A stretch of 64,000 nucleotides of DNA, taken from IMG/VR virus record IMGVR_UViG_3300042544_001590, positions 143,490-207,489 of that record; one strand, written 5' to 3'. Each line of letters opens with the position of its first letter. Positions within the stretch are counted from its first letter, which is position 1. Positions 23,463-57,257 of this stretch are shown piece after piece. A program made the position numbers and the translations under genes. A model generated the notes under the pieces. It was not told the origin of the DNA. It saw nothing but the letters and a program-made list of their open reading frames with translations, and did not search any database.

Positions 23463-23948
23463 TCAGAACCCAAGCTTTTTACAATAACTTTCACATTCAA
23501 TAGGCACAACTGTTCCAGTTCTTGGAACAGTTGTTGTGGTCGTTGTGGTCGTAGTCGTTGTTGTGGTGGTCGTAGTTATTTGAATGGTGAATGGATTGAG
23601 AGATGTCGGGGGTATTAGATCAATAACTAACGGGGGAATGGTTCGTGTTGTAAAGTTCGGAATGACGGGGGAATTGATTACTGGTGGGTTTGGAGGGGGC
23701 GCACAGCAATCACTTAAAGATGGTGTCGTGGAAGAACCTGATGGTGTTGTTCCAGTGGTGCTTGTGGGGGGTTCTGGCGTGGTGGTGCCTGAGAGAGTAG
23801 TGGTGGTGCTTGTGGGGGGTTCTGTAGTGATGGGGGGTTCTGGCGTGGTGCTGGTAGTACTCGTGGTGCCTGAGAGAGTAGTGCTGGTGCTTGTGGTGGG
23901 TTCTGGCGTGGTGGTGCCTGAGAGAGTAGTGGTGGTGCTTGTGGGCAT
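23463..23948 (-). CDS. Thr/Pro/Ser-rich mucin-like protein
   Basis: Repeated TSTTTTLSGTTTPEP, a poly-Thr run, and Cys at CC and CESYC. Confidence 0.7.
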   Translation of the reverse strand: MPTSTTTTLSGTTTPEPTTSTSTTLSGTTSTTSTTPEPPITTEPPTSTTTTLSGTTTPEPPTSTTGTTPSGSSTTPSLSDCCAPPPNPPVINSPVIPNFTTRTIPPLVIDLIPPTSLNPFTIQITTTTTTTTTTTTTTTTVPRTGTVVPIECESYCKKLGF

Positions 23949-23971
23949 TACAGTGTCAAAGTATATTTACA

Positions 23972-24439
23972 TTATACGATCATATAATTTACATCGGAAA
24001 CGATGTAAAAAGTGTTGGAATCGTTGGAAGCCGATAGTGTTGACCACTCAACCGAAGTGACCCGAACCAGATTATCAATCTGAACACCCCCCAGAGCTTG
24101 GTTTGTATCACTAATCACACCAGAACCTCCAATTTTTTCCCAATCGGATAATAGAGAACCATCATTTACAGATAGGCGATATAATACATTCGCATCACTA
24201 TTATATGCTAGATCGCCAATTTCAGCAGGGGCAAAGATAGTAACATCTGGATTCGATCCTTTAAACACATTACCTGTCAACACTCCCCCATTATCAGCAC
24301 CATTCCCGATGAAAAGACGTTCGGTATCGGTGGTGAATGCGAATTCCCCGGAATTTAAAAGGACATTTAAACGTTCTGCGTTAGTTCCTTGACGGGCAAG
24401 CAACTTTAAAAGGGTGTCGTTGGTGATTGATATTGACAT
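23972..24439 (-). CDS. fibre/baseplate-associated protein with Mtd-N-like domain
   Basis: KLLARQGT...GEFAFTTDTERLFIGNG. Confidence 0.65.
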   Translation of the reverse strand: MSISITNDTLLKLLARQGTNAERLNVLLNSGEFAFTTDTERLFIGNGADNGGVLTGNVFKGSNPDVTIFAPAEIGDLAYNSDANVLYRLSVNDGSLLSDWEKIGGSGVISDTNQALGGVQIDNLVRVTSVEWSTLSASNDSNTFYIVSDVNYMIV

Positions 24440-24440
24440 A

Positions 24441-25499
24441 TTAGTATGTGAAGATTGGGATTGCGAATCTATTTACCGTTTTTCCGGTTTCGGATGTATT
24501 CCCCGCAAATGTGATGAATCCAGCGGAAGATAAGGTGATTGATATGGAAGAAAGACCATTGGAAGACAGTGCTGTGAAACTTGTCAATTGTATTCCGGGA
24601 ACCACACCATCCGTGAGTTGTGATGGACTACCATTGAATAGTGTGGATAGGGAATTATTGGTGGAATTTCCAGTCAGAGTATCATAAATTGTCAGCGCGT
24701 CCTTGGAAATGGCTTCCCAATTTGATAATGCCGTGGATGGCAATGATTGTAATTGGTAGATTACTTTATCAACCGATGCAGTGTTCCCTACTTTGGCGGG
24801 AAGTCCACTGAGGGCATTATAGGCAGACACGGGGAGGTGTGATTGGGTGTTTAGACCATAAGCTGAAATTCTGGCGTAATTTGCCGAAAGTATTCCAGAC
24901 TGGAATGTGAAATCGGTGGGGGAAACGGTCAGAGATATCGGTCTTCCATTACCACCACTCAATCCATTGCTAAATGAAGACGATAAAAGTTCTCTTGTAG
25001 TGATTCCACCAGTCTTGATTGAAAGTTGGTTGGATGATATTTCAAAAAAGTTTGTTCTATAATTTAGTTGGATTTTTCCATCAATGATATTGACACCATT
25101 TGTAACGGTGTTTGGGTTAATTTTGGAAGCGGATAATCCACTAACAGCCATATTAACGGTGGAAGACGAATCATATATAAATTCGGAAGAGAATTTGGTT
25201 CTCATGTCCCCCCAATTTGTTATGACACTATAAGGGGATGCTGTAAGCTGATACCAGATGGAATTAACGGAAACTAAGTCTCCAACTTCAGCCAAAGTGG
25301 TGCTAAGGCTATAATAATTATTCAGAGGGGGGTGAATTTTGCTGGAAACTGGATTACCCCCACTCAACACTCCATTACCAACGAATAGACGTTTGGAATC
25401 TGTTGCGTGAACAAGTTCTCCTTGGTCGAAACGGGTTGAATTGATCTCAGCGTTTGTTCCTCTACGAACTTTGATTTTTGAAATGTAAATGTCTGCCAT
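24441..25499 (-). CDS. tail fibre-like protein with Mtd-N-like domain
   Basis: KIKVRRGT...QGELVHATDSKRLFVGNG; Ser-rich. Confidence 0.65.
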   Translation of the reverse strand: MADIYISKIKVRRGTNAEINSTRFDQGELVHATDSKRLFVGNGVLSGGNPVSSKIHPPLNNYYSLSTTLAEVGDLVSVNSIWYQLTASPYSVITNWGDMRTKFSSEFIYDSSSTVNMAVSGLSASKINPNTVTNGVNIIDGKIQLNYRTNFFEISSNQLSIKTGGITTRELLSSSFSNGLSGGNGRPISLTVSPTDFTFQSGILSANYARISAYGLNTQSHLPVSAYNALSGLPAKVGNTASVDKVIYQLQSLPSTALSNWEAISKDALTIYDTLTGNSTNNSLSTLFNGSPSQLTDGVVPGIQLTSFTALSSNGLSSISITLSSAGFITFAGNTSETGKTVNRFAIPIFTY

Positions 25500-25511: not shown

Positions 25512-26141
25512 TTATGTTAAGCGTTTCCATATATAAACACCAAAAGACGGTGGGGTGATGTTATGTGCTAATGATCCACCCGTTTCTTCTATAATATTAC
25601 TGTAAGAACCATATTCCAAAATGCTGTCCATACCAGAAAAACCGTTTCCGTCTCTGAGTGTGTCGGTGTTTTCTCCCCCGGTGCCGTTCCTTACTCTGTG
25701 GCTATGTGCTGGAATTTCATTTGTTGTTAATGTGTGTTGATATTCTCCAGCATTTGATCCGGGAGATATCGTTTTATTTACCCCGTTGGTATCCGTTCCA
25801 GTGCCAACTCCCGCCAAGAATACACCATCAGAAATTTTAACCCAAGTGGTTCCCACAAATCGAGTTTGGGGATTGACATCTAAAGTATCAAGATAAACTG
25901 CCCCGACCGGATAAAGATAATCGATAATACTGGGATAACCAGTCAATGTGAGACAATCCGCTGATAAACACCCACTAACAGATGCACCGTTTCCAGCAGA
26001 ACCCAACCTTAAAGAAGATTTGTTACCCAATCCATCATAAACAGGGGGTAAATTTGCTTCAGATAGTGGAACATTTGCAGTGTGTAGAACACCTTTGTAA
26101 CTATCAGCGACGAATAAATTGGTTAAATCTGGTAAAGCCAT
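25512..26141 (-). CDS. baseplate/short fibre protein with gp10 C-terminal-like domain
   Basis: YPVGAVY, NP, HTLT..EIPAHSH, AHNITPP...YIWKR; TAAATA-N5-ATG. Confidence 0.75.
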   Translation of the reverse strand: MALPDLTNLFVADSYKGVLHTANVPLSEANLPPVYDGLGNKSSLRLGSAGNGASVSGCLSADCLTLTGYPSIIDYLYPVGAVYLDTLDVNPQTRFVGTTWVKISDGVFLAGVGTGTDTNGVNKTISPGSNAGEYQHTLTTNEIPAHSHRVRNGTGGENTDTLRDGNGFSGMDSILEYGSYSNIIEETGGSLAHNITPPSFGVYIWKRLT

Positions 26142-26149
26142 ATTGTTAT

Positions 26150-27928
26150 TTATTCGGTGGATGTTAAGTTGGCAACTAATTGTTTTTGCAAGTTTGTCAA
26201 TAATGTTAAAATTCTTTGTAACATTAAAACGTTGATTGTTTCATTACCATTCATATAAAGATTGTTAGTGTCATATGTGATTTCCTGAATTTTGTTCAAA
26301 AACACATCATTTTTACCAATTGAATAGGAATTGGTGGCTTTGGTGTAAAGGGTTAATACATCTTTTAAAATATATGAGATGGTTTTATTTAAAAACAGAC
26401 CAAAAGATGTGTCTGAACAACGGATACCGTCATATGTTTTCACCAAATCCAATGAAACGGATGCAAGATATGAATTTAATATATTTTGACGAATTGGATA
26501 GATTCTACCGGAATTTAGAAGAAACAAATAATTTTTATCTGATTTAGTAATACTATCAAACATATAATTAGTGAAAAAATTGGAATCCGTTGTTTCGGTG
26601 TTCCATTTTAATACTCCATCACCGAATTTTTGTAAATAATTCTTGAATGTCTCTTTCTTCACATATTTTAGATTGTTTTCTCTCATTTGTCCCACTGGAT
26701 ATGTGGGGTTAGATATCATACGAGTGTGAGATTGCATAGTGCTATTCAAATAAAACACGTTTGAATCATAGGTTGAAAACGAAATTCTATAATTATCACT
26801 ATCATTAAACTCGAAAATTTCCTGATCCAATAAACTGTTCTCTATATCAAGAGGGTCAAAAAATGTCACATGGAATTTTTCAGATTTTTTATGCAGGATG
26901 AGAACACAATCATCAATAACCCTAATATTAACGTCCAATAGTTGATTAATACCAAGGGATTCTAAATTAAAGTCAACAATTTTATCAGTTGAATACTTAT
27001 TTCTAAGAGTGAGGTTATCCCCTTCAATGGATGTTCTGTAATTATTGCCAAACCGTATGAATTCCGTGGAATATTCTGTGAGGTTATAAAATTTACGATT
27101 CCATTTACCAATTAAATTTTTATATGCTTTTTGAGTTCCCCAAGTGAGAATTTCAGAATCAACATCCCCCAATTTAATACTGTCAATCAATACCAGAGTA
27201 TCACATGTGATATAATTGATTGAATCATACACCAACAATTCCCCAAGAATGATGATTGTTATTTTATTTTCAAATTCATCATAATCAATCCCATATATCT
27301 CTTGCCCAAATTCCAATTCTTGAATGGAATATTCAATATACCCCTCATCTGTAAATGATCCTTTAAGTGTATATAATTCAAATCCGGTGGAACAGAGGTA
27401 TTTGAAAGTTTGATCCGAGCTAACGAATAATGCACCATATTTAATTTTTTCCAGAAATGCCCATTCCGGGGAATATCGAAATGGATCAATGTGGGAGATG
27501 TTTTTCTTCCCAAGCATGAGATCGTCATTTCTCATGTCAACGATGGTGGATGACAACCCGTAATAATGGGAGTCGTTTTCCGTGAAATTGATGATTTGAG
27601 GATTATTAACAATCAGAGATTTGAAAACAATTAGATTATTCTGGTTGATGATGGATAATAATCTTTCCATCTCAACCTTGTTGAGAACATCAAAAACATT
27701 GGCTGTTATATCGGATGTTTCCGTGATTGAATCAAATTGATTGTCAAATTCCATTTTATTGAGATAGAAATCTGAAATGAAAGTGTTCTTCGGAGTAAGT
27801 TGCTCAGAAGTCTCGCTTTTTTTGCGTTCCGTATATGCAACCCCTTCTTCAACGTGGAAGAATCCAGAGTAATCGGCACCATTTAAGGTAAATGCTTCAC
27901 CGGATGTAAATTTGAAATAGGAAATCAT
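26150..27928 (-). CDS. putative baseplate structural protein
   Basis: 592 aa in baseplate operon. Confidence 0.5.
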   Translation of the reverse strand: MISYFKFTSGEAFTLNGADYSGFFHVEEGVAYTERKKSETSEQLTPKNTFISDFYLNKMEFDNQFDSITETSDITANVFDVLNKVEMERLLSIINQNNLIVFKSLIVNNPQIINFTENDSHYYGLSSTIVDMRNDDLMLGKKNISHIDPFRYSPEWAFLEKIKYGALFVSSDQTFKYLCSTGFELYTLKGSFTDEGYIEYSIQELEFGQEIYGIDYDEFENKITIIILGELLVYDSINYITCDTLVLIDSIKLGDVDSEILTWGTQKAYKNLIGKWNRKFYNLTEYSTEFIRFGNNYRTSIEGDNLTLRNKYSTDKIVDFNLESLGINQLLDVNIRVIDDCVLILHKKSEKFHVTFFDPLDIENSLLDQEIFEFNDSDNYRISFSTYDSNVFYLNSTMQSHTRMISNPTYPVGQMRENNLKYVKKETFKNYLQKFGDGVLKWNTETTDSNFFTNYMFDSITKSDKNYLFLLNSGRIYPIRQNILNSYLASVSLDLVKTYDGIRCSDTSFGLFLNKTISYILKDVLTLYTKATNSYSIGKNDVFLNKIQEITYDTNNLYMNGNETINVLMLQRILTLLTNLQKQLVANLTSTE

Positions 27929-30150
27929 GGAATTGTTAAATTATTTATCTCTGTTGTAATCGGAGAACGATCAACAATCTCTGAAGATATACGATTATGA
28001 AGTCCAACCATATCAGAATCTTCCAATTCAACATTTTTGATGAATATATTAACAAAATTCGATTTATAAGCTTGATTGCTGCACACGCTTTGAAGGTATT
28101 CAACCGTGTCGGTGCTGTTCCTCATACCGCAAGGTAAAGTAATTGTAATTGGGTCTATTTTAGATTCCCCATCAAGCATTGGAGTGATAAATGCGAGATT
28201 TTCTGATGTATATTCTGTGGTTACACCAACTTTCAACAAGGTATTTTGGTTAAAAATGTCCTCATCATTCACCACAAAATCTCCAAACACCAATCTTTTC
28301 CCATAAAATTGGTAAATATCAAAAGTGTAATACCCCACAATTTGATTATTGAGAAAGAAATATAATTGTCCGGTCACAGTATCAATTGAAACACAAACAA
28401 AATTGCGCTGGGATGGTTTATACACAACCGTTTCCGTGAAAGTGGTGGTTTCAACGAATCCGGGATTATAAAGGTTCATTTCAAATATCAGATTATCACC
28501 TCTTTTTTCAATGGTGAGTCCTCCATTGGTATTATTTCGTTTGCTTTTGAATTTCCAATTTTGTCTATTACCATCAAAATAAAATTTTACGGTGAATTTA
28601 CCAGCATCATTCAATTGTTTGAAATAATTAATATTATTTCCGGTTGTTATTAGGGATTGACAGGGTGTTATCACCACCGGATCGGTTATAGATTCTTCCG
28701 CTTTAATTCTTTCATATGTATATTTTCCATTTGGAATGAATACCATATCGCTTTTTTTATCAAACACTGTGAAAGATGAGAGACTGTCTTGTATCGAGGT
28801 GTTTGCCGCCACCAATTCCTCCACCACATCATCATATGTAGGATTGAATGAATTATCTCCCATCAGTGCTAAGGATTTTTCAATCAAATCGGGGTAATAG
28901 TAACGATCCACCCAAACTTTTTCACTACCAAGGGGGGAACCGGACAACCAAGTGCATAGATATGTTTGCCCATCATCATAGCTCACTGAAACATCGGAGC
29001 GATATACCTTATCTGCATATTCGGGCGTTGGATATCCAAATGCCCCCGATTCCACGAATTTTGTATCATTGATATTGATCCTGCTGAATGGGGACATGTT
29101 ATCCGGCGCAGTAAAACGATTCAGTCCGGGAAGAATTTCATATGATTTGTTGTAAAGAACATAATTTAGAGCTAAAGTCTCATCTTTTTCAGTGTCAATA
29201 TCATTGAAAATGGATGTATAATTTCGCATACCATCAACGAAAAATTTCAGGTCTTGAGAAGATAGTAATGTGTTGCCCGATGTGAACGTATTGTCTTGGG
29301 TGAGTTGATTCTTTAGAACAATGATATCAGTTGAATCGTTTTCACGGTGTAACAGATAGTTATTCTCCAAATCCTTTAGTATTCCGTTTTCCGATATGGT
29401 ATTATCGTCCTCATATTCGACATAAGAAGTATTTGGATTGATATTGAAATCGGAATATATGTCTTTGCTCAGATAAATGGGATTGGCATACACACTCGCT
29501 TTATTTGCGGATGTAGATGGGGATAGTGTGAGGAGGTTTCCGGTTTTTCTGACAAAATGAGTAATCCCTGATAAGGTTTGAAATAGAAATATTGCCTTAT
29601 TTGGGCGAGAATATATGTATTTGAAATTAGATGCAGTTAATCCCAGATTTTGAGTGTAAAAATTTAATTCATCATTAGCATTTCTAGTCAAATAATACTT
29701 TTTGTAATCGTAATATTGGTAAATATCGCAGACATTATCAGATTTTAGTGTGATGACGAAATTGGTTGACAAAGTATCACCGTTGGTTGTGAAATTATAA
29801 TTGCCATAGTATTCACTCTCATTGTAAATACCCAATAATCCCAATTGTCTATTATCAGCATTTTGAAACGCCAAAAAATTACCCCCAAAGTTCAGATTGG
29901 TCAACAACGAATCGGATTTCAGAATTTGATCTTCCTTTTCGAGAATGTTCGATACTTTGGTGTTTCTAGTCAGTAAGAAATTGGTATAATTCTTATTTTT
30001 GACATCAACGATACCCGAAAGAGCGTTGTAAAACGTCAGAGTATAATCTCCTTGATAATATCTTGAAAAATTCTGAAACCTTACATCCTCCAAATTTGAG
30101 GAAAGGGGAACAGATTCACAGGATGATAATTTATCAAACAAAATAGCCAC
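27925..30150 (-). CDS. putative baseplate structural protein (GTG start at 30150)
   Basis: TAAATA-N5-GTG fixes the start; possible LamG-like C-terminal region. Confidence 0.55.
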   Translation of the reverse strand: MAILFDKLSSCESVPLSSNLEDVRFQNFSRYYQGDYTLTFYNALSGIVDVKNKNYTNFLLTRNTKVSNILEKEDQILKSDSLLTNLNFGGNFLAFQNADNRQLGLLGIYNESEYYGNYNFTTNGDTLSTNFVITLKSDNVCDIYQYYDYKKYYLTRNANDELNFYTQNLGLTASNFKYIYSRPNKAIFLFQTLSGITHFVRKTGNLLTLSPSTSANKASVYANPIYLSKDIYSDFNINPNTSYVEYEDDNTISENGILKDLENNYLLHRENDSTDIIVLKNQLTQDNTFTSGNTLLSSQDLKFFVDGMRNYTSIFNDIDTEKDETLALNYVLYNKSYEILPGLNRFTAPDNMSPFSRININDTKFVESGAFGYPTPEYADKVYRSDVSVSYDDGQTYLCTWLSGSPLGSEKVWVDRYYYPDLIEKSLALMGDNSFNPTYDDVVEELVAANTSIQDSLSSFTVFDKKSDMVFIPNGKYTYERIKAEESITDPVVITPCQSLITTGNNINYFKQLNDAGKFTVKFYFDGNRQNWKFKSKRNNTNGGLTIEKRGDNLIFEMNLYNPGFVETTTFTETVVYKPSQRNFVCVSIDTVTGQLYFFLNNQIVGYYTFDIYQFYGKRLVFGDFVVNDEDIFNQNTLLKVGVTTEYTSENLAFITPMLDGESKIDPITITLPCGMRNSTDTVEYLQSVCSNQAYKSNFVNIFIKNVELEDSDMVGLHNRISSEIVDRSPITTEINNLTIP

Positions 30151-30154
30151 AAGA

Positions 30155-30640
30155 TTATTTAATGAGTAATTCCAATAGATAACCACCTTCATCAGTCACC
30201 AACTGATGAATCTTTGAACCGCTCTGTAAATAATCTGTATTTACAAGCTTAACATCTCTCACTGATGTCGCATAATCATAGTTGGTGATGGATAAAGGTA
30301 ATGTAAAAGTTGATATATCAGTATTGGTATAATATAAGGAAACCGTCGCTGTCAGTGTTTGGCTTGTGGAGATGGCAGATGGGAAGTATTCGTGTGTGTA
30401 GGTGGTCATCAGAAGAGATGAAAACACGTTGGATGCAATGTTTTGATTCTGTAGTATATCATTTTCAAAGAAATCTTCCACATTATCTCCCCAATCAATG
30501 GTTAGGTGTGTGGGAAAAATTCGTTCAGTGGCTCCCGATAACGATAATGTCAACAAGGTATGATCAACCACACCTATTGTTGAATAGGTGGTGGTTTGAT
30601 TGGTGTTTGTTGAAGACAAGGATAGGAATTTGGTGTTCAT
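30155..30640 (-). CDS. putative structural protein, PKD-like
   Basis: IDWGD...THEY. Confidence 0.5.
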   Translation of the reverse strand: MNTKFLSLSSTNTNQTTTYSTIGVVDHTLLTLSLSGATERIFPTHLTIDWGDNVEDFFENDILQNQNIASNVFSSLLMTTYTHEYFPSAISTSQTLTATVSLYYTNTDISTFTLPLSITNYDYATSVRDVKLVNTDYLQSGSKIHQLVTDEGGYLLELLIK

Positions 30641-33201
30641 CGTTGTTTGATTTGCTTATGGTTAATCATGGAGAACGGATTCAATTTGAAATCGAATTCC
30701 TGAATGATGAATTGATTGTCCACGGTTTTCATGAGGAATGATATATTATATTGATCGGAGCGATTATCATAGGTGAACATGGGTTCTTCCGCCTTGATGT
30801 ATGCTTCCGATCCTCCCGACACAGCATAGAAGTTGGTCAAACCTCCCACTAAATGAATTTTTCTAATATGTTTGGTAGTATCAATTTCATAAATTGTTGG
30901 ATATATTTTGAAATCGTTACCCACCACTGGATAAGTCTCAACATCCAATCTTGCGTAATACACCTTATCTTTTTTCTTATATCTCTTGGATATCTTTTGG
31001 TAAGGATTATCGTTGAACGATGTGACATATGTAGATTCTTTGGGATTTACAAATTCCCCGTTCTCGAAAAGGATTTTTTGGACGATTAGATTGTTATCGG
31101 TTTGGATAAACATGGTGTCACCCACCACTTCAAACGATAAAACACCTGACAATTCATTGTAAACGGAACTCAACAAGGTTGTTGAGAGATAACCGAATGT
31201 TGTTTGGAGTGGTTTCACTTCTTTGGTGTATGCATTTCTAACATACATGGTGCCAGTAGATGACAATCTTGTGAAATAATTCTCAGTGGGGGAAGATGAA
31301 AGATTGTAAACGCTGGTTTGCAGCACTGTAGGATCGTAGTAGATGGATGGAAGCTGGAATTGTATATCACATAGCGAATTTGTTACTTTACCACCATCAA
31401 TCATGAAAGTCGTTGTTTCATCGGGAACAATTTCTTGGGTAGCGTTTGCAGTCAGGGTTGGATACGAAGGATCAACCAAGGCTCTTTGCAGGGGGGACGA
31501 GTCATGAACACCCCCTTCGATCAAACGGGAGTAATAGTAAGTGCCACTGAGAGGATAGCCACTCAAATCAGATGAAATGGTATCGGTCGCGGGAACTCCA
31601 TTGCGGAAAACATTATAACCTTCCAGAATTTGACAACTTGGATAAAAATCGGGAGGATATACGAACTCATCAGTGAATTTACCACCAAAGAGGATATAAT
31701 GACGGGAGAAATCCGTGGTGAAACCTCCAGTGTATGAGGATAACCCCGATCTTGTGGTGTATGGGAAGGTGGAATCATCAACTGTTGAATAATCGAAGGC
31801 ATATCCTTCCCCATATTTGAAATCGTAAAATGTGTGACCATCCAGAATGATATATTGTTTTTCCGTTTCGGGAATTACCTTGATGGTTTGCTTGAAGCTT
31901 CCATCATTTTTAAACAAACCATAGAGATTGTTATAGATATCCTCCTTGGCATCCTGAATGTAACCCGATTCAAACACCTTATCCAGATATTTGGAAGGTG
32001 TCGTCTCCGTTTGGGATATATAACCGTAATATTGGGAATCGCTTTTATTACTAATCGGTTGATTTTTGGCTTTTCCCGAAGAATCATTGCGTTTCAGGAA
32101 CAAATCGTTGTTCACAAACGTGAGAACACCATCATTATTACCTCTGATATCAGGATCAGGAAAATAATAGATGGTATTTGGTTCCAAATTATTAAAATTG
32201 AAGGAATATGAAGGTCTTTCCCCATCAATTAAAATAATGGATAGCTTGTGGGGGCGAAAGAACCCCATTTCCATGGGTGTTTTGAACTCTTTTCTCTGCG
32301 TGGAGGCTGTTGTGGGGTATTTGGTATTGAAAAAAGAAGCTGCCGGATTATCAGCGTCCAACATCTTACCAGAAATAAAATCATATACAGTGGAACCCGT
32401 GGAAAGATAATAATAATTGGAGGAAATATATTTTTCCGTCAATTTTCTTTTATTATCCAATAAGGAATCCCCTTCTTTCAGTTCTATCAGGGGAGCGGAT
32501 ACACCCGCGAAGATTTCAGGAATGAGTTCCGCATTGGTTTTGAGGAAAATATCCAACCCATAATCCAAATCCTTGTTGTCATATATCTGATCATTGGGAG
32601 TCTGATTGAAGTATTCAGGATATGTTTCATACAATTCTTCAATTTCAACTTCCAAATTGTTTTTCAGATTGGAAAAGTCATAATTGATCTTTCTGTTATC
32701 AATATTTTCCAGATAATTTATGGTGATATCCTTGATATCCTTGGTCAATCCAAAATTTGTTCCTGAAATTCGCTTCTTGGTGATCTGAAATTTGGCTTCT
32801 TCCCGTTTTTTATTGTAATATTCCGAAATTTCAATCAATTTACGGGAATAAAACGGAATGGCAATATCAAGGTCAAGCGGATCATTGAAATCTAGCTTGG
32901 AAAGGAATTTCTGTTCCTCCAAAGTGGTGTATTCCAGATTGACATCCTGAATGAATTCCCGATAACGCTCAATGATTACGGAATTAGCATCAACAGTCTT
33001 GGTATTCTTTACAAAATTCCATACCTTGAGATATGCTGTGTAATAATCCTGATTCTTGGAAGGATTGAACGACGCATCCATCGTTTTGATGAATTGTAGG
33101 AAAGAAAGGGGAGTATTCGCATCCAGAGCATCACGAACCATCACATTTGGATTGGTGATGGACTTGGGAATGTTCGGATAACCTAATGATGTTAGAGTCA
33201 T
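30637..33201 (-). CDS. putative baseplate structural protein
   Basis: 854 aa; TAAATA-N6-ATG. Confidence 0.55.
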   Translation of the reverse strand: MTLTSLGYPNIPKSITNPNVMVRDALDANTPLSFLQFIKTMDASFNPSKNQDYYTAYLKVWNFVKNTKTVDANSVIIERYREFIQDVNLEYTTLEEQKFLSKLDFNDPLDLDIAIPFYSRKLIEISEYYNKKREEAKFQITKKRISGTNFGLTKDIKDITINYLENIDNRKINYDFSNLKNNLEVEIEELYETYPEYFNQTPNDQIYDNKDLDYGLDIFLKTNAELIPEIFAGVSAPLIELKEGDSLLDNKRKLTEKYISSNYYYLSTGSTVYDFISGKMLDADNPAASFFNTKYPTTASTQRKEFKTPMEMGFFRPHKLSIILIDGERPSYSFNFNNLEPNTIYYFPDPDIRGNNDGVLTFVNNDLFLKRNDSSGKAKNQPISNKSDSQYYGYISQTETTPSKYLDKVFESGYIQDAKEDIYNNLYGLFKNDGSFKQTIKVIPETEKQYIILDGHTFYDFKYGEGYAFDYSTVDDSTFPYTTRSGLSSYTGGFTTDFSRHYILFGGKFTDEFVYPPDFYPSCQILEGYNVFRNGVPATDTISSDLSGYPLSGTYYYSRLIEGGVHDSSPLQRALVDPSYPTLTANATQEIVPDETTTFMIDGGKVTNSLCDIQFQLPSIYYDPTVLQTSVYNLSSSPTENYFTRLSSTGTMYVRNAYTKEVKPLQTTFGYLSTTLLSSVYNELSGVLSFEVVGDTMFIQTDNNLIVQKILFENGEFVNPKESTYVTSFNDNPYQKISKRYKKKDKVYYARLDVETYPVVGNDFKIYPTIYEIDTTKHIRKIHLVGGLTNFYAVSGGSEAYIKAEEPMFTYDNRSDQYNISFLMKTVDNQFIIQEFDFKLNPFSMINHKQIKQR

Positions 33202-37103: not shown

Positions 37104-37109
37104 TGTTAT

Positions 37110-44847: not shown

Positions 44848-45055
44848 ATGTGTTTTCAATAAATTCCCGAACGTTTTCCAAATTACAAATATCATTTTCG
44901 TATAGATATTCCTGTATGCCCTCACATAAATCATCAGCCATTTGGGAAATCTCTTCGTCATCCACAGTATGAAGGAAATCCTGTAAATCCATAATGGATT
45001 TTATGATTTTCTCTTCGTGTAGTTCCAATTTTTTCAGTATCGTATTCTTTTTCAT
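44834..45055 (-). CDS. hypothetical protein
   Basis: 73 aa; first gene of the rml/gp44 operon. Confidence 0.55.
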   Translation of the reverse strand: MKKNTILKKLELHEEKIIKSIMDLQDFLHTVDDEEISQMADDLCEGIQEYLYENDICNLENVREFIENTYEQA

Positions 45056-46247: not shown

Positions 46248-47120
46248 ATGATAAAAAATGCTATTTTTCATATTGAGGGGGGGTTGGGTAAAAACATTGT
46301 AGCCACTTCGGTTATCCGTTCCTATAAAAAGGAACATCCAATCCACAACATTATAGTAAATTCTGCATATCCTGACATTTTTCAAGGAAATCCTGATATT
46401 GATAGGTGTTATCTATTGGGAAATACTCCGTATTTTTATGAGGACTTTATCTTTGATAAAGATTGTGAAATATTTGCACATGATCCATATAAAACAACGG
46501 CACATATCACCAAACAACAAATATTGGTGAAATCGTGGTGTGATATGATAGGGGTTACTTATGATGGTTTAAATCCGAATATCCATTTTAATTTTAGGGA
46601 AATGGAAATATCCAGAGCGTTACTACCTCAAACTGATAAACCCATTCTCATCTTTCAACCATTTGGAGGCGCACAAAACCAAGAATTTCCATACTCATGG
46701 ACAAGGGATATTCATCCTTTCATTGCCCAAGAAATAATCAATAATCTTAAAGAACAATATACAATATTGCATATTTGTCACCCCCACCATCCTCAATTAC
46801 AAAATGTGATTCGCTATGATAAAAATCAAAATAAAAAGATTTTATGTGCCATGTTGAATCTTTCTAAAAAAAGAATTCTAATCGACTCTTCCTTACAACA
46901 TGCTGCGGCTGCCATGGGATTACCATCAACAGTGGTGTGGGTTGGGACACAACCGGAAGTATTTGGTTATGATATGCATAATAATATAACTCCCCATGTT
47001 ACCTTTCCAAAGGGTAATATTAATTCGTATTTATATGATTATAGTTTCAATGGAATCATCCACGAATGCCCATATGATAACATTTATCAAATTTTCAATA
47101 TCGAAAACATCATAAAATGA
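46248..47120 (+). CDS. GT9-like (GT-B) glycosyltransferase
   Basis: GGLGK, NPDID, IDSSLQHAAAA.G.P..VVW. Confidence 0.75.
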   Translation: MIKNAIFHIEGGLGKNIVATSVIRSYKKEHPIHNIIVNSAYPDIFQGNPDIDRCYLLGNTPYFYEDFIFDKDCEIFAHDPYKTTAHITKQQILVKSWCDMIGVTYDGLNPNIHFNFREMEISRALLPQTDKPILIFQPFGGAQNQEFPYSWTRDIHPFIAQEIINNLKEQYTILHICHPHHPQLQNVIRYDKNQNKKILCAMLNLSKKRILIDSSLQHAAAAMGLPSTVVWVGTQPEVFGYDMHNNITPHVTFPKGNINSYLYDYSFNGIIHECPYDNIYQIFNIENIIK

Positions 47121-47908
47121 GAGATATATTTTATGTGTCCGGCTTACCCAGATCGGGAAGCACTCTTCTGATGAATCTGATGGCACAAAATCCTAAAGTA
47201 TTCTGTACTCCTACATCGGGTTTGAATCAATTGATGAATAATATCAAAACATCGTGGGGTAATATCATTGAACATCGATCTGATAAAAACGCTGGTAATG
47301 ATGAAAATTTGAAGCGTATCCTAAACACTATATTACATTCCTACCATAATACCGAAAAACCGTATGTCATCGACAAATGTAGGGGGTGGGGATTCTCCAT
47401 TGAAATGTTGGAGGCAATCACCAATAAAAAAACCAAGATCATAGCACCAGTTAGAGATATAAAGGATGTTCTTGCGTCTTTCGAATTATTATATCGAAAG
47501 GGTTCCTACAAGTTCAACCCCCAAGGACCAATGCCCCAATGTTTAACAACTGAAGGTAGGATGATGCATTGGGCAAGTTTGGATGGGGAAGTCGGTGCTG
47601 CTTACGCAATATTAAAGGATGCTTTTTTAAGAGGATTGGGGGATAGATTCCTTTTGGTGGATTATGATTATCTGACACATAATCCTAAAATTGTCATGGA
47701 CGTAATTTGGGATTTCCTCAATATACCCAAATGTGAACATGATTTTGAAAACATATTGAACCAAACACCAGAAGATGATGGTGTTTATAATTATGTCGAT
47801 TTACATAAAATTAAGAGTAAAGTCGCACCATCCAGTTCAAAAGCTAAAGAAATTTTGGGGGATGAAATATGTAAAGGATTGGATGGTTATGAATTTTGGA
47901 AGAAATGA
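47117..47908 (+). CDS. sulfotransferase
   Basis: 5'-PSB GLPRSGSTLL; 3'-PB VRD..DVLAS. Confidence 0.85.
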   Translation: MRDIFYVSGLPRSGSTLLMNLMAQNPKVFCTPTSGLNQLMNNIKTSWGNIIEHRSDKNAGNDENLKRILNTILHSYHNTEKPYVIDKCRGWGFSIEMLEAITNKKTKIIAPVRDIKDVLASFELLYRKGSYKFNPQGPMPQCLTTEGRMMHWASLDGEVGAAYAILKDAFLRGLGDRFLLVDYDYLTHNPKIVMDVIWDFLNIPKCEHDFENILNQTPEDDGVYNYVDLHKIKSKVAPSSSKAKEILGDEICKGLDGYEFWKK

Positions 47909-48289: not shown

Positions 48290-48293
48290 TTAT

Positions 48294-50202: not shown

Positions 50203-51075
50203 ATGTCCTCTGGTTGTCCAACAATTCCTTTATCGTGTCTAACACCTGAAAACATCTTTGCTGGTGTCTATCGCCCCAATTGTGGGGGATTTGCCGATCC
50301 ATCCAACTTTCAGGCGGAAAGAGCCATATTCAATTCCCAATTCGGGGAGCTTATCAACAATTATGGGGTGGAGATTGATTATTTTGTCAATACTTTCAAT
50401 CCCAAGGCGATGAACTCCATCTATGGGGAACATACGCTCATGTATTGGCTTGGTCCAACAACCATCAAGGCATATATCCAGATGGAAAACGGTTCCCCCA
50501 TATATGCTCTGGCTGGTATGGATTCTCCCGATACCCTGACACTATATTTACATATTGATGACTTCAACACCAAGTTTGAAGGACTCAGCATTTTTGATGG
50601 ATTTTTATACGATGAATCAAATAATAAGATTTTAACGGAAACTGGGGAACCGATCATTGTTGATAGGGACGATGGGCCATTTGTTCCCGAACCTAAATCA
50701 CAGGATAAGATTCGTGTAACACCATTTGGTTGCGATAGACCAAATGGTAGGGGAGCCAAGATATTTGAGGTTACGGAAGCCATGGATGAGGATCAGAGCG
50801 AACTCAATCCTGCGATGGGACATTATGTGTGGAGACTGAAAGCTGTCCGTAGCGAACATAACTTCACCACCAACGAGCCAAGGGAGGAATATAACCAGCA
50901 GATTGCGGACAATTCCTATTTTGGTAAGCTCTCCTCTGTCATGTTCCCCGAACTCTCAAGTGTGTTGGATGATAACAAGGTATATACGCAAAATTCCGAT
51001 GAAATCGTGCAAAGGGACGTGTTTCCTCCATCTACGGGAGGAAGTGATGGGAGTGTTTACGGTAATTATTTCTAA
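50203..51075 (+). CDS. neck/head closure protein (gp14-like)
   Basis: ELI..YG....Y, YGE, EP...D.I, IFEV, YVWRLK; precedes terminase. Confidence 0.6.
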   Translation: MSSGCPTIPLSCLTPENIFAGVYRPNCGGFADPSNFQAERAIFNSQFGELINNYGVEIDYFVNTFNPKAMNSIYGEHTLMYWLGPTTIKAYIQMENGSPIYALAGMDSPDTLTLYLHIDDFNTKFEGLSIFDGFLYDESNNKILTETGEPIIVDRDDGPFVPEPKSQDKIRVTPFGCDRPNGRGAKIFEVTEAMDEDQSELNPAMGHYVWRLKAVRSEHNFTTNEPREEYNQQIADNSYFGKLSSVMFPELSSVLDDNKVYTQNSDEIVQRDVFPPSTGGSDGSVYGNYF

Positions 51076-54642: not shown

Positions 54643-54805
54643 TATATTTTTAGGAAAATTACCAACAATGGTTCAAGGAGACGAACCATTGGGAGCAGAA
54701 TTGATAGCCAAATTGGAAAAATATGCGGAAGATAATAAATTACCATCTTTCAAGATTGTCGAGGATATTGATGGGAATTCCGTGGCAGAGATAATTAAAA
54801 AATAG
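54635..54805 (+). CDS. small hypothetical protein (not in ORF track)
   Basis: 56 aa MNDIFLGKLPTMVQGDEPLG... Confidence 0.5.
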   Translation: MNDIFLGKLPTMVQGDEPLGAELIAKLEKYAEDNKLPSFKIVEDIDGNSVAEIIKK

Positions 54806-54809
54806 TGGA

Positions 54810-54854
54810 ATTGCTGTTTAGGAAATTTTTGGCGGGGATTTGCTAAATAGTAAT
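54810..54854 (+). promoter_or_regulatory. RNA hairpin enclosing the sheath late promoter
   Basis: About 20-bp stem with G-U pairs and one mismatch; TAAATA 54844-54849, ATG 54855. Confidence 0.6.
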
Positions 54855-57257
54855 ATGGCAACACGCACAATAAATTCGGCTGGGGTAGAGATATTTGAGA
54901 GAGATTTAAGTCTAGTCGCACAGACGAACGTAGGCACGAATGTCTTTGTAGCTGGATATACCCCCCAAGGTTATTCCGACGAGGTTTTGAAAATCACCAC
55001 CAGAGATGAACTGGAATCAATCTACGGAACCCCAACCAATAGCGCAGAACGCTATTTCTATTACACTGTCCGCGAACTACTCAACTCTCCTGCAAACATC
55101 TACACTTTCCGCCTTCCATATGGATCGGGAACTGGAGATGGATTTGGAACACAACATTCCGCTCTTGTATATCCTGTTGTTGCCGCTACTCCAACTGATG
55201 TAACAACAACCAGAAGCCTTGATCTTTCTGCTGCAACCTATTTCCTTGGAAAACCCTATCAGATTACCCTATCTGAAACGGAATTTGCCCAAGCCATGGA
55301 AGGAACCCTCTTCGATTGGTCTTCCACTGCTGGAAGTAGAGCGGAACTTATTTCTGGATTTTCCACTGACCCTCTTAGTGCGCTAACCTTAAAACAACGT
55401 ATGGGCAATGCTGGTGTCATTGTCTTTGATAAAGCCCAAACCACGATCAATAGCCAATTTGAAGGTTATTATGTCGGTATCGCAGATAACGTCAATCTCA
55501 ATCCTGCATCCAATTTTGATGCAATCACCCGCGCCTATACCACAAGCCTTACTGCTGGGGTGATTTCGGATTATACCCAGATTCCAAACGGAACTCTCCA
55601 ATTCAATCTCTCAGCTACTGCTGGAGGTGCCACTGGTAGTATCTCCCAAGTCATGGAGAACCTTACCGATTATAACATCGATGGTAGGGAAGATGATGAC
55701 CTTCTGAATGTTGGTGTGTTTAAGCTCCGCAAGAGTGTTTATGCAACCGAAGCGTTTAAACTGGATTATGTGCTTGATGACCGTATCGTGGGTTCCATTG
55801 ATACCTTCAGAACTCAACTCAATCCAAATGGTGGACCATCGGTTCCATTCTTCCTTGAGACTCAGGATACCAATTCCCGCAACGTGGAAATCATGGTCAA
55901 CCCATTCATCTCCAACAAATTCACACAATCCTCGCTGGATTCTTCGGGTAATCCTCTCAAGAAAATCCGTGTGGTGACTGAGAGCTTGCTTAATACTGAA
56001 TATGCATCCATTTCTGCTGCATTAGGTATTACAACCACTACCTCTACCGCGCCCGCTCTTAGTGCTAACTTAACGGTAGCCAATACATATGCTCTTTCTG
56101 GTCTTGATGCAAGCGTGGGAGTCGCAAATGCCCTGTATCCTCTTGGTGTTTACAACCCTGTCAAGATTACCCAAAAGATCATCGGCAATGTTCCAACCAA
56201 GATCAACCGCGCTCTGGAATCCATCAAGAATGATGAAATCTATGACATTGATGTGGTTGTCGAAGGTGGTCTGGGAACGATCTTTACGATGATGTCTGCT
56301 GCGGGAACTGATTACTATGATGACACCCTCTACAATACCGCTCTGAAGACCAAGGTGGATACCCTGAGAACTTCGGGTGACATTTCCAATGATGCGGTTG
56401 CAACCGATCTCCGTGCCAATTACAGCGCGATCTTCAACCAATTTGAGAATTTCTGTAACCTTCCAAGCAATACTGGTGGTCGTGGAGACTGTGTGTTCAT
56501 TGCTGATCCAATCCGCCACATCCTTGTTACGGGTAGAAACACCAAGATTCTCTCCGATAGAAACAAAAATTTCCAAAAGGATGTTTATTGGGCAATGCGT
56601 CACCAATTTGAATTGGAAAACACTTCCTATGCTGCCACCTATGGTAACTGGATTCTGGGTTATGATGATTTCAGCGGTGAAAAGGTTTGGCTTCCATTCT
56701 CTGGATACCAAGCTGCTATCATGGCCCGTAGCGATGCTGCGGAATTCCCATGGTCTGCTCCTGCCGGATTTACCCGTGGTCTGGTGACTAATGCTCTGGA
56801 TATTGCAATCAATCCGAATCAGAAACAGCGTGATGAGTTCTACAAGATCAACATCAACCCTGTCATGTTCTCTCCCGCCCAAGGTGTGGTTGTGTTTGGT
56901 CAGAAAACTATGAGCCGCAAACCAAGTGCATTTGATCGTATCAATGTCCGTAGGCTCTTCCTCGCTCTGGAAAGACCTACCAAGAAAGCTGCTCAATTCT
57001 TCGTGTTTGAACCCAACAACGAATTCACCCGCACTCGCTTGGTGAACGTTCTCACTCCGATCTTCGAATTTGCGAAACAGAACGGCGGTTGCTACGATTA
57101 TCTGATCGTTTGTGACGAACGGAATAATACTCCCCAAGTCATTGATACCAATGAGTTGAAAGTTGACATTCTTATCAAACCAACGAGAACCGCCGAGTTT
57201 ATTTTAATAACTTTTACGGCTACCCGTAGTGATGCCAACTTTGAAGAGTTGATTTAA
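54855..57257 (+). CDS. contractile tail sheath protein (gp18-like)
   Basis: S.GVEI.E.DLS, PW.APAG..RG, INP, FGQKT, SAFDRINVRRLFL, FEPN. Confidence 0.95.
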   Translation: MATRTINSAGVEIFERDLSLVAQTNVGTNVFVAGYTPQGYSDEVLKITTRDELESIYGTPTNSAERYFYYTVRELLNSPANIYTFRLPYGSGTGDGFGTQHSALVYPVVAATPTDVTTTRSLDLSAATYFLGKPYQITLSETEFAQAMEGTLFDWSSTAGSRAELISGFSTDPLSALTLKQRMGNAGVIVFDKAQTTINSQFEGYYVGIADNVNLNPASNFDAITRAYTTSLTAGVISDYTQIPNGTLQFNLSATAGGATGSISQVMENLTDYNIDGREDDDLLNVGVFKLRKSVYATEAFKLDYVLDDRIVGSIDTFRTQLNPNGGPSVPFFLETQDTNSRNVEIMVNPFISNKFTQSSLDSSGNPLKKIRVVTESLLNTEYASISAALGITTTTSTAPALSANLTVANTYALSGLDASVGVANALYPLGVYNPVKITQKIIGNVPTKINRALESIKNDEIYDIDVVVEGGLGTIFTMMSAAGTDYYDDTLYNTALKTKVDTLRTSGDISNDAVATDLRANYSAIFNQFENFCNLPSNTGGRGDCVFIADPIRHILVTGRNTKILSDRNKNFQKDVYWAMRHQFELENTSYAATYGNWILGYDDFSGEKVWLPFSGYQAAIMARSDAAEFPWSAPAGFTRGLVTNALDIAINPNQKQRDEFYKININPVMFSPAQGVVVFGQKTMSRKPSAFDRINVRRLFLALERPTKKAAQFFVFEPNNEFTRTRLVNVLTPIFEFAKQNGGCYDYLIVCDERNNTPQVIDTNELKVDILIKPTRTAEFILITFTATRSDANFEELI

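What the first reader, a model, noticed from the sequence alone, without database searches (positions are those of the whole stretch)
23463..57257. L-S-[A/G/S] tripeptide enriched in outer virion proteins: candidate sequon of a phage virion glycosylation system
Seen (hand counts of LSA/LSG/LSS): 9 in the 352-aa fibre (24441), 10 in 694 aa (33211), 7 in 854 aa (30637), 7 in about 740 aa (27925), 5 in the sheath (all in its variable middle region), 3 in the mucin-like repeats and 3 in the 45126 fibre. Many ISA/VSA/ISG/VSG variants also occur. By contrast I count about 5 in roughly 2600 aa of UvsX, helicase, gp32, primase, clamp, clamp loader and terminase together, about five- to six-fold fewer per residue. 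The carriers are largely unrelated proteins, so shared ancestry does not explain it. The window also encodes three GTs, a sulfotransferase and dTDP-sugar enzymes. Inference: a phage-encoded, sequon-directed Ser O-glycosylation (perhaps sulfated) coat over tail and baseplate, for shielding, adhesion or mimicry of host polysaccharide. This is my best candidate for an undescribed system.
Basis: partly seen in the sequence, partly recalled or inferred. Interest (0 to 1): 0.88.

Follow-up and report, generated by a model that had tools for sequence, protein, structure and literature searches.

The report
Leu-Ser-small motif on outer virion proteins
An uncultured group of aquatic T4-like phages carries a sharply defined three-residue motif (Leu-Ser-small residue) many times over on the exposed proteins of its tail and baseplate but not on inner or replication proteins. 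This looks like a recognition site for a phage-encoded modification such as sugar attachment, though no modification has been shown.

Summary
All hand counts reproduce exactly. In a blind scan of all 8000 tripeptides, LSS, LSG and LSA are the three most enriched in the four core proteins (33 seen, 4.3 expected). Local-composition shuffles of eight carrier proteins give 45 seen against 9.3 ± 2.8. Codons are diverse, so the signal is at the protein level.

The enrichment holds across an uncultured clade down to about 40% identity. It covers at least eight protein families strongly and two weakly; the two families tested by profile comparison are unrelated and have different folds. It is absent from gp6, gp25, hub, terminase and replication proteins, from T4, and from a cyanophage. 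In the sheath, all 44 sites lie in the exposed insertion domains.

The logo is sharp: Leu much more than Val or Ile; Ser much more than Thr; then Ala, Gly, Ser or Cys.

A clade-core GT2 glycosyltransferase sits at the end of the fibre operon and is almost always paired with a Thr-rich, mucin-like protein. That supports virion glycosylation in general, but nothing ties GT2 to the Leu-Ser motif.

Best reading: a trans-recognised acceptor motif, most likely for Ser O-glycosylation (confidence about 0.4). Rivals are a structural motif or another trans-acting factor. Burial could not be computed.

The parts
33211..35295 (-). 694-aa peripheral baseplate protein just downstream of gp6. It has four tandem Ig-like/PKD beta-sandwich domains, then a helical part and a mixed C-terminal part. 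It carries 10 L-S-[AGS] sites.
   Evidence: 10 seen, 1.1 expected. Family of 120 homologues: 956 seen, 126 expected, with invariant L20-S21 and L587-S588 and near-invariant L258-S259. AF2 pLDDT 81. Foldseek finds Ig/FN3 folds.
30637..33201 (-). 854-aa peripheral baseplate protein with 7 sites.
   Evidence: 7 seen, 0.84 expected. Orthologues below 85% identity: 157 seen, 41.9 expected.
30155..30640 (-). 161-aa protein with 2 sites. LSS at residue 8 is conserved across the family.
   Evidence: Orthologues: 62 seen, 9.9 expected. Site positions.
27925..30192 (-). Peripheral baseplate protein (recorded aa, starting 14 codons inside the ORF) with ConA/LamG-like jelly-roll domains. It carries 7 sites.
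   Evidence: Family of 119 homologues: 593 seen, 120 expected, with an invariant LSG at residues 402-404. AF2 pLDDT 76. Foldseek finds CBM40, pentraxin and LamG folds.
24441..25499 (-). 352-aa fibre protein with an Mtd_N N-terminal domain and 9 sites.
   Evidence: 9 seen, 1.5 expected; 2.0 under local shuffles. Orthologues: 174 seen, 26.5 expected.
45126..46229 (+). Ser/Ala/Gly-rich fibre-like protein with 3 sites. Not significant on its own, but enriched across the clade.
   Evidence: P = 0.16 alone. Orthologues: 108 seen, 31.9 expected.
50203..51075 (+). About 290-aa protein of unknown function just upstream of the large terminase, possibly a neck or collar component. It has 2 sites.
   Evidence: Orthologues: 77 seen, 10.1 expected, with conserved sites near residues 65 and 217. 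No Pfam, PHROG, NCBIfam or PDB match.
54840..57257 (+). Tail sheath. Its 5 sites all lie in the insertion region (residues 129-419), outside the conserved sheath core.
   Evidence: Pfam sheath domains at residues 596-794. In 9 distinct orthologues, all 44 sites lie between residues about 115 and 495. Orthologues: 41 seen, 12 expected.
25512..27928 (-). gp10_C-domain protein (25512-26141) and a 592-aa protein (26150-27928). Both are only weakly enriched.
   Evidence: Pfam Gp10_C. Orthologues: 2.4-fold and 2.25-fold.
23463..23948 (-). Thr/Pro-rich, mucin-like 161-aa protein (37% Thr, with a run of 16 Thr) and a conserved Cys-containing C-terminal part. It is the last structural gene before GT2.
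   Evidence: Translation. The L019 orthologue is also Thr-rich but has no LSG. A Thr-rich ORF lies next to GT2 in about 50 of about 65 loci.
22612..23451 (-). GT2-family glycosyltransferase at the end of the fibre operon. It is a core gene of the clade.
   Evidence: Pfam PF00535. 531 relatives found in IMG/VR; the best 80 loci kept are 57-100% identical and include the contigs of the most distant 33211 relatives. No homologue in cultured phages or the PDB.
43194..44961 (-). RmlA-like sugar-1-phosphate thymidylyltransferase (43194-43946) and an RmlD-like reductase/epimerase (43930-44961).
   Evidence: Pfam. NCBIfam best matches are rmlA and rmlD, below the equivalog cut-offs. RmlA is found in 23 clade loci.
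47117..47908 (+). Sulfotransferase.
   Evidence: Pfam Sulfotransfer_3 and Sulfotransfer_1. Present in 11 loci.
35295..37103 (-). gp6 baseplate wedge, an inner virion protein that lacks the enrichment. It serves as an internal negative control.
   Evidence: PHROG 219. 1 seen, 0.69 expected. Orthologues: 35 seen, 40.8 expected.
38416..38901 (-). gp25 baseplate wedge. It has no motif and serves as an internal negative control.
   Evidence: Pfam GPW_gp25. Orthologues: 1 seen, 6.6 expected.

Best explanation
L-S-[A/G/S/C] is a short motif recognised in trans. Selection keeps it at high density on the solvent-exposed proteins and domains of the tail, baseplate periphery and fibres in one uncultured clade of aquatic T4-like phages.

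The most likely recogniser is a phage-encoded cytoplasmic enzyme that modifies the Ser hydroxyl during late infection, and the best candidate modification is O-glycosylation. On this reading the phage supplies an activated sugar through its RmlA-like and RmlD-like enzymes. One or more phage glycosyltransferases transfer it to Ser, probably on nascent or not-yet-folded chains because Leu is usually in a beta strand. The sulfotransferase may then modify the glycan. The result would be a glycan coat on the outside of the tail.

Shown: the motif, its specificity, its clade-wide conservation, its restriction to exposed parts, and the presence and conservation of the enzymes. Inferred: that the motif is modified at all, which enzyme does it, and what the coat is for.
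For: 1. Statistics. LSS, LSG and LSA are the top three of 8000 tripeptides. The result repeats independently in a relative about 43% identical in the 33211 homologue (L056).
2. Sharp logo from 41 proteins of 8 genomes. At -1: Leu 5.7-fold, Val 2.0, Ile 1.6, Phe 1.1. At 0: Ser 5.7-fold, Thr 1.7. At +1: Ala 8.6, Cys 5.2, Gly 5.1, Ser 4.8, Thr 2.2, with Asn, Gln, Glu, Pro and Lys depleted. A preference for Leu over beta-branched residues is not what strand propensity alone would give.
3. Eight families are clearly enriched and two weakly. The two tested by profile comparison are unrelated, and their folds differ.
4. The motif is absent from inner and non-virion proteins of the same genomes: gp6, gp25, hub, tape-measure-like protein, terminase and clamp loader. 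It is also absent from T4 (9 seen, 9.65 expected) and from a cyanophage giant baseplate protein (0 seen, 5 expected).
5. In the sheath, 44 of 44 sites are in the exposed insertion domains.
6. The sites behave like sequons. A few are invariant and many turn over (69 alignment columns in one family). Some shift register in a mutually exclusive way, 36 against 36 sequences with 2 carrying both.
7. The secondary-structure context is heterogeneous: strand, strand end, hairpin turn, helix cap and loop.
8. GT2 is a clade-core gene inside the fibre operon and is paired with a mucin-like Thr-rich protein. Sugar-nucleotide and sulfotransferase genes sit among the virion genes.
9. In a more distant phage, a GT2 orthologue lies next to a 1097-aa protein with 18 sites against 2.4 expected.
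Against: - No chemical evidence exists.
- Nothing links GT2 to the Leu-Ser motif. Its conserved neighbour is the Thr-rich protein, which usually has no motif.
- Most sites are in confidently folded beta structure rather than the flexible segments typical of bacterial O-glycosylation. Only 4 of 17 sites fall in low-pLDDT blocks, about the background rate. Leu there is probably buried.
- Several sites are invariant at 40% identity, which also fits a structural role.
- Some GT2 orthologues (57-62% identity) lie next to large proteins with no enrichment.
- The motif matches no described sequon (my own knowledge).
- The glycan genes could instead serve DNA hypermodification or remodelling of the host surface.
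Confidence: 0.4

Rival explanations
1. A structural or assembly motif with no modification. A hydrophobic Leu anchors a strand, and Ser plus a small residue form a tight turn, cap or packing contact. This clade's exposed beta-rich modules have converged on the arrangement, for example for stability in the environment or for packing between subunits.
For: Many sites sit in strands, at strand ends, in hairpin turns or at a helix N-cap in confident model regions. Several are invariant across families. Three different proteins have LSS near the N-terminus.
Against: The two families compared are unrelated and have different folds. The secondary-structure context is heterogeneous, and there is no preference in the flanking residues. 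The motif prefers Leu over Ile and Val. It is absent from T4 and from cyanophage beta-rich baseplate proteins, and from the beta-rich inner proteins of the same virion. Sites shift register.
Confidence: 0.25
2. The motif is recognised in trans, but not by a glycosyltransferase. It could be the acceptor for another Ser modification (phosphorylation, acylation, ADP-ribosylation or direct sulfation), or a docking site for a chaperone or a decoration protein that coats the exposed parts of the tail.
For: The arguments for trans-recognition are the same as above. A sulfotransferase and several conserved proteins of unknown function lie among the virion genes.
Against: No kinase, acyltransferase or ART domain was found in the window with Pfam, PHROG or NCBIfam. 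A tripeptide is short for a protein docking site. The glycan-related genes are the only modification machinery identified next to the carriers.
Confidence: 0.2
3. A chance or compositional artefact: Ser-rich and Leu-rich fibrous proteins, with the motif chosen after looking at the data.
For: The fibre 24441 has an L/S-rich patch with three LSS within 15 residues. The three LSG in 23463 count as one duplication event.
Against: The motif ranks 1-3 of 8000 in an unbiased scan. Local-composition shuffles give z of about 12. Permuted-motif controls are far lower. The result repeats in distant genomes and in hundreds of homologues.
Confidence: 0.02

Closest known systems
Mycobacteriophage virion glycosylation (Freeman et al. 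2023, as summarised in PMC12619734)
   Same: Phage-encoded glycosyltransferases decorate virion proteins in the host cytoplasm, and the glycans are proposed to shield the particle.
   Different: There the glycans sit on the C-terminal tails of the capsid and tail-tube subunits of actinobacterial siphoviruses, and no tripeptide sequon is described. Here the candidate sites are internal, on the baseplate periphery, fibres and sheath of a T4-like myovirus. The tube protein has none. The GT2 has no homologue in any cultured phage.
Sequon-directed glycosylation: N-X-S/T glycan shields of enveloped viruses, and the Bacteroidetes O-glycosylation motif D-(S/T)-(A/I/L/V/M/T) (own knowledge)
   Same: A three-residue acceptor motif with a hydroxyl or amide residue and a restricted neighbour. 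It is dense on exposed proteins, and sites are a mix of conserved and shifting ones.
   Different: The motif itself differs: Leu at -1, and only small residues at +1. The compartment is the cytoplasm rather than the ER or periplasm. No glycan has been shown here.
Cytoplasmic multi-site glycosylation of bacterial adhesins: HMW1C on HMW1, and the heptosyltransferases Aah/TibC on AIDA-I/TibA (own knowledge)
   Same: A soluble cytoplasmic glycosyltransferase modifies dozens of sites on a beta-rich surface protein before it reaches its final folded or assembled state.
   Different: Those enzymes belong to other GT families and have different acceptor rules. There is one substrate per enzyme rather than about ten unrelated substrates.
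Mucin-type O-glycosylation (GT-A-fold polypeptide glycosyltransferase acting on Thr/Pro-rich tracts; own knowledge)
   Same: The GT2 (a GT-A family) is paired across the clade with a 20-44% Thr protein.
   Different: This concerns the Thr-rich protein, not the Leu-Ser motif. The enzyme is a GT2, not a GT27. No glycan has been shown.
Chlorovirus PBCV-1 capsid glycosylation (own knowledge)
   Same: Virus-encoded glycosylation machinery acts in the cytoplasm on structural proteins at non-canonical acceptor motifs.
   Different: That is a eukaryotic giant virus with N-linked glycans on the major capsid protein.

Membership tests
Sequon-directed protein glycosylation system | A short, defined acceptor motif centred on a hydroxyl or amide residue | tested here: met
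   L-S-[A/G/S/C] with a sharp preference at each of the three positions and none in the flanks.
Sequon-directed protein glycosylation system | The motif is concentrated on exposed target proteins and absent from non-targets | tested here: met
   Eight families are enriched 3.4- to 7.6-fold. gp6, gp25, hub, terminase, clamp loader and sugar enzymes stay at or below about 1-fold. Sheath sites occur only in the insertion domains.
Sequon-directed protein glycosylation system | A dedicated glycosyltransferase co-occurs with the motif | tested here: inconclusive
   GT2 is present in all clade genomes examined, including the most distant ones, so there is no contrast to test. Its conserved neighbour is a Thr-rich protein without the motif. 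Some GT2 orthologues have unenriched neighbours.
Sequon-directed protein glycosylation system | The acceptor residue is solvent-accessible | tested here: inconclusive
   Only secondary structure and pLDDT were returned, not coordinates. Sites are in strands, strand ends, turns and loops.
Sequon-directed protein glycosylation system | A glycan is covalently attached to the motif residue | not testable with these tools
   This needs mass spectrometry.
Known sequons (N-X-S/T; D-(S/T)-(A/I/L/V/M/T)) | The motif is identical to a described sequon | tested here: not met
   Position -1 is Leu (5.7-fold), and no other residue at -1 exceeds 2-fold. The comparison with known sequons rests on my own knowledge.
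Mycobacteriophage-type virion glycosylation | Glycosyltransferases homologous to those of glycosylated cultured phages | tested here: not met
   tblastn of the GT2 against 50,697 phage records found no match.
Mycobacteriophage-type virion glycosylation | Acceptor sites on the C-terminal tails of the capsid and tail-tube subunits | tested here: inconclusive
   The tube protein (59773-60375) has no motif. The capsid gene is outside the window and was not reached.
Mucin-type module (GT-A enzyme plus Thr/Pro-rich acceptor) | A Thr/Pro-rich protein is encoded next to the transferase, and the pairing is conserved | tested here: met
   The adjacent ORF has 20-44% Thr in about 50 of about 65 loci at 57-100% GT2 identity.
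T4-like contractile-tail baseplate | gp6, gp25, gp10 C-domain, sheath, tube and T4-type large terminase are present in a syntenic late region | tested here: met
   The nearest cultured relatives are only 21-26% identical in gp6.
dTDP-L-rhamnose pathway (RmlABCD) | All four enzymes are present | tested here: not met
   Only an RmlA-like and a weak RmlD-like protein were found, both below the NCBIfam equivalog cut-offs. No RmlB or RmlC was found among the ORFs scanned.

The most novel reading that the evidence does not exclude
A phage-encoded, sequon-directed Ser O-glycosylation system whose sequon is L-S-[A/G/S/C]. It would coat the exposed tail, baseplate periphery and fibres of a widespread uncultured clade of aquatic T4-like phages, alongside a separately glycosylated mucin-like Thr-rich virion protein. 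This would be the first defined sequon for phage virion glycosylation and the first glycan shield on a contractile tail.
Probability: 0.3. Interest if true: 0.88.

Novelty: new variant of a known kind. Interest (0 to 1): 0.72.

Why it matters
Post-translational decoration of phage particles is almost unexplored outside mycobacteriophages, and no acceptor rule is known. A three-residue signature that can be read from sequence would have several uses.

- It would predict which virion surfaces are modified.
- It would give a function to the many orphan glycosyltransferase, sugar-nucleotide and sulfotransferase genes in aquatic phage genomes.
- It would offer a simple test: co-express the enzyme with a fragment and compare Ser-to-Ala and Leu-to-Ala variants.

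If the motif turns out to be structural or to bind a partner, it is still a new, clade-specific rule shared by about ten virion protein families (the two tested are unrelated), and that needs an explanation.

Tried and rejected
- **Global composition artefact.** Rejected by whole-protein shuffles.
- **Local composition (Ser-rich patches).** Rejected by 15- and 30-residue block shuffles.
- **Post-hoc motif choice.** Rejected by the all-tripeptide scan and by replication in a distant genome.
- **DNA-level motif.** Rejected because the codons are diverse.
- **Hidden shared ancestry or shuffled domains.** No BLAST similarity among the carriers, hhalign probability 0.2% for the one pair compared, and different folds.
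- **A generic property of T4-like baseplates or Ig-rich virion proteins.** Rejected with T4 and cyanophage ACG-2014f.
- **A single structural context (helix N-cap or hairpin).** Contexts are heterogeneous.
- **A longer motif (Y-N-x-L-S-G).** No significant flanking preference was found.
- **The mucin-like repeat as a motif carrier.** This is incidental, because orthologues lack it.
- **Searches that found nothing.** No cultured-phage homologue of 33211, GT2 or the region DNA. No PDB or family hit for 50188, 48192, 46248, 41471, 37103 or GT2.
- **Reaching the capsid module to test the major capsid protein.** Not achieved. Walking gave hub and lysozyme genes only.
- **Solvent accessibility.** Model coordinates are not exposed to scripts.
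- **Freeman et al. 2023.** The paper is not held in the library, so it is cited second-hand through PMC12619734.


Full report
**What the window is.** The window is the last 64 kb of a 207-kb IMG/VR contig, a coordinate mapping I derived. It comes from a distant T4-like myovirus. The annotated genes are:
- UvsX, DnaB-type helicase, gp32, primase and clamp loader;
- T4-type large terminase, sheath and tube;
- gp25, gp6 and a protein with the gp10 C-terminal domain.

The nearest cultured phages are only 21-26% identical in gp6. The proteins of interest have no cultured-phage homologue at all. Hundreds of metagenomic relatives exist in freshwater and marine samples.

**Checking the observation.** Every hand count reproduces. 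Expected counts from each protein's own composition are 0.8-1.5, against 7-10 observed in the four core proteins (24441, 27925, 30637, 33211). Poisson P is 3e-7 to 5e-5, and 0-1 of 5000 shuffles reach the observed count.

Shuffling only within 15- or 30-residue blocks removes any effect of Ser-rich patches. It still gives 45 observed against 9.3 ± 2.8 over eight carrier proteins.

In the core four, LSS (17 seen, 2.3 expected), LSG (10 seen, 1.25 expected) and LSA (6 seen, 0.8 expected) rank first, second and third. They also rank first to third in 14 structural proteins. The remaining 12,249 residues of the window show 14 seen against 11 expected.

Permutations of the same residues (SL[AGS], [AGS]SL, S[AGS]L and others) give 2-14 occurrences against 33. 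The codons used for the motif are diverse, so the signal is in the protein and not in the DNA.

The three LSG in the mucin-like protein 23463 have identical codons. They count as one duplication event.

**The signal is a property of a clade, not of one genome.**
- The 33211 family (120 homologues, 41-94% identity) has 956 motifs against 126 expected.
- The 27925 family (119 homologues, 36-100% identity) has 593 against 120.
- I surveyed all ORFs in the 87 clade loci held at that point (80 returned by the profile scan) and pooled orthologues less than 85% identical to the window.

| Family | Seen | Expected |
|---|---|---|
| 24441 fibre | 174 | 26.5 |
| 30155 | 62 | 9.9 |
| 33211 | 478 | 68.9 |
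| 27925 | 85 | 19.3 |
| 30637 | 157 | 41.9 |
| 45126 fibre | 108 | 31.9 |
| Sheath | 41 | 12 |
| 50203 (unannotated, beside the terminase) | 77 | 10.1 |
| gp6 | 35 | 40.8 |
| gp25 | 1 | 6.6 |
| Hub protein 38902 | 14 | 14.6 |
| Terminase | 11 | 11 |
| Clamp loader | 5 | 7.5 |
| RmlA-like | 3 | 3.1 |
| 48192 family | 0 | 7.1 |

The gp10_C protein and 26150 are weakly enriched, at about 2.3-fold. Inner hub, tape-measure-like and lysozyme genes in L089 have 1 site in about 2,000 residues.

A blind tripeptide scan in L056, a relative whose 33211 homologue is 43% identical, again puts LSA, LSG and LSS first to third. In the other proteins of that locus they rank below 2000th.

**Controls outside the clade.** Twenty-one T4 structural proteins have 9 motifs against 9.65 expected. 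The 4225-aa Ig-rich baseplate protein of cyanophage ACG-2014f has 0 against 5. The signature is therefore not a general feature of T4-like baseplates or of beta-rich virion proteins.

**Anatomy of the motif.** I pooled 41 carrier proteins from eight diverse genomes, 22,420 residues in all.

| Position | Enrichment |
|---|---|
| -1 | Leu 5.7-fold (214 seen, 37.6 expected); Val 2.0; Ile 1.6; Phe 1.1 |
| 0 | Ser 5.7-fold; Thr 1.7; all others about 1 |
| +1 | Ala 8.6; Cys 5.2; Gly 5.1; Ser 4.8; Thr 2.2; Asn, Gln, Glu, Pro and Lys 0.4-0.6 |

No preference extends into the flanks.

Within families, a few sites are invariant while the third residue wanders among small residues. These are L20-S21 and L587-S588, with near-invariant L258-S259, in 33211, and LSG 402-404 in 27925. 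Many other sites turn over. The motif occupies 69 alignment columns in one family and 44 in the other.

Some regions keep a motif but shift its register in ungapped alignment. One example has 36 sequences with one register, 36 with the other, and only 2 with both.

**Are the carriers related or alike?** BLAST finds nothing between them except the shared Mtd_N domain of 23972 and 24441. Profile-profile comparison of the two large families gives probability 0.2%.

The AF2 models show different architectures:
- 33211 is four tandem Ig-like/PKD sandwiches followed by helical and mixed parts (pLDDT 81).
- 27925 contains ConA/LamG-type jelly rolls (pLDDT 76). The many toxin-binding-domain hits in that list only reflect this common lectin fold.

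In the models the motif sits in strands, at strand ends, in hairpin turns, at one helix N-cap, in 3-10 helices and in loops. Only 4 of 17 sites are in low-confidence blocks. So there is no single structural context, but the sites are also not concentrated in disordered linkers.

**Exposure.** The carriers are the peripheral baseplate proteins, the fibres, the sheath and a small protein next to the terminase. The non-carriers include the inner wedge, hub and tube. Within the sheath, all 44 motif sites in 9 distinct orthologues lie between residues about 115 and 495. That is the variable insertion region, which by analogy with T4 gp18 forms the outer surface. None lie in the conserved N- and C-terminal core.

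**The glycosylation genes.** Pfam confirms two glycosyltransferases, not three.
- GT2 at 22612-23451 is the last gene of the fibre operon.
- A Glyco_tranf_2_5 protein at 5172-5852 lies beside a Mom-family gene and the replication genes. It more likely serves DNA modification.

An RmlA-like thymidylyltransferase, a weak RmlD-like reductase and a sulfotransferase lie among the virion genes. RmlB and RmlC were not found among the ORFs scanned.

GT2 is a core gene of the clade. The profile scan found 531 relatives; the best 80 loci kept are 57-100% identical and include the contigs of the most distant 33211 relatives. In those genomes GT2 is better conserved (63-68%) than 33211 (40-45%).

In about 50 of about 65 loci that have flanking sequence, the ORF next to GT2 is a protein with 20-44% Thr. 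In the window this is 23463, which has a run of 16 Thr. The pair looks like a mucin-type acceptor plus its transferase, and it is good circumstantial evidence that this clade glycosylates a virion-associated protein.

The pair also cuts the other way. The Thr-rich proteins usually have no Leu-Ser motif, so the obvious substrate of GT2 is not the motif.

In one more distant phage, a GT2 orthologue is followed by a 1097-aa protein with 18 motifs against 2.4 expected. In others, GT2 orthologues lie next to large proteins with no enrichment.

**Interpretation.** A tripeptide with a sharp three-position specificity has been gained repeatedly in about ten virion protein families, two of which were directly shown to be unrelated with different folds. 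It is kept at a few fixed sites and allowed to shift at others. It is confined to exposed proteins and domains, and it is absent from the same kinds of protein in other phages. The simplest explanation is that something recognises it in trans.

The only modification machinery found next to the carriers is glycan-related. For that reason I rank Ser O-glycosylation first, at about 0.4. It would probably act before folding, as cytoplasmic adhesin glycosyltransferases do.

A purely structural motif is the main rival, at about 0.25. The invariant sites, the beta context and the probably buried Leu favour it. The diversity of folds, the heterogeneous context, the Leu-specific logo, the register shifts and the outside controls argue against it.

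Another trans-acting factor, meaning a different Ser modification or a coat or chaperone protein, remains open at about 0.2. Chance or composition is excluded.

**Comparison with known systems.** Phage virion glycosylation is known from mycobacteriophages, where glycans sit on the C-termini of capsid and tail-tube subunits (PMC12619734, citing Freeman et al. 2023). Sequon-directed glycosylation is well known elsewhere. The motif here matches no described sequon, the enzyme has no cultured-phage homologue, and the targets differ. If the reading is correct, this is a new variant of a known kind. If it is not, the signature itself remains undescribed and unexplained.

**Verdict.** Interest is 0.72.

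Noticed in passing
window 22612-23948 (-); loci L098-L192: GT2 and a Thr-rich (20-44% Thr), mucin-like small protein form a conserved gene pair at the end of the fibre operon across the clade. This is a candidate mucin-type acceptor and transferase module, separate from the Leu-Ser motif.
   Followed up: yes
window 2082-6222: A Mom-family protein (2082-2726), a 549-aa unknown protein, a 243-aa unknown protein and a Glyco_tranf_2_5 glycosyltransferase (5172-5852) cluster beside UvsX and the DnaB-type helicase. This is a likely DNA hypermodification module.
   Followed up: partly
window 57328-59154 (+): A 608-aa ORF lies between the sheath and tube genes. It matches homing/HNH endonuclease PHROGs and, weakly, Mom-like proteins. 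It looks like a mobile insertion in the tail module.
   Followed up: partly
window 16947-17909 (-): A LAGLIDADG homing endonuclease sits in a patch of 30% GC. In relatives (L019 and the P0110 locus) a LAGLIDADG domain is fused into a terminase of about 950 aa.
   Followed up: no
window 37103-38419 (+): A 438-aa ORF of unknown function lies on the opposite strand between gp25 and gp6. It is absent from L018 and L019, where gp25 directly precedes gp6.
   Followed up: partly
window 48192-49322 (+) and 29 orthologues: This conserved late protein has 0 L-S-[AGS] in 29 orthologues against 7.1 expected. This may be avoidance of the motif, or simply phylogenetic non-independence.
   Followed up: partly
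window 45126-46229 (+); L040 5046-7712; L073 1323-2531: The Ser/Ala/Gly-rich fibre has its own internal repeat. SNF, ATN, TNA and FLG are the top tripeptides in relatives, and the protein expands to 888 aa in L040.
   Followed up: no
window 23972-25499 (-): Two adjacent fibre proteins carry the Mtd_N (major tropism determinant N-terminal) domain. I did not look for a reverse transcriptase or template repeat.
   Followed up: no
window 62077-64000 (+): An ORF of more than 640 codons runs off the end of the window and of the contig. The ORF lists do not show it, and the minus-strand ORFs listed there are probably spurious.
   Followed up: partly
33211 family columns 393-402; 27925 family columns 519-523: The motif shifts register by 1-4 residues in a mutually exclusive way, in ungapped alignment.
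   Followed up: yes
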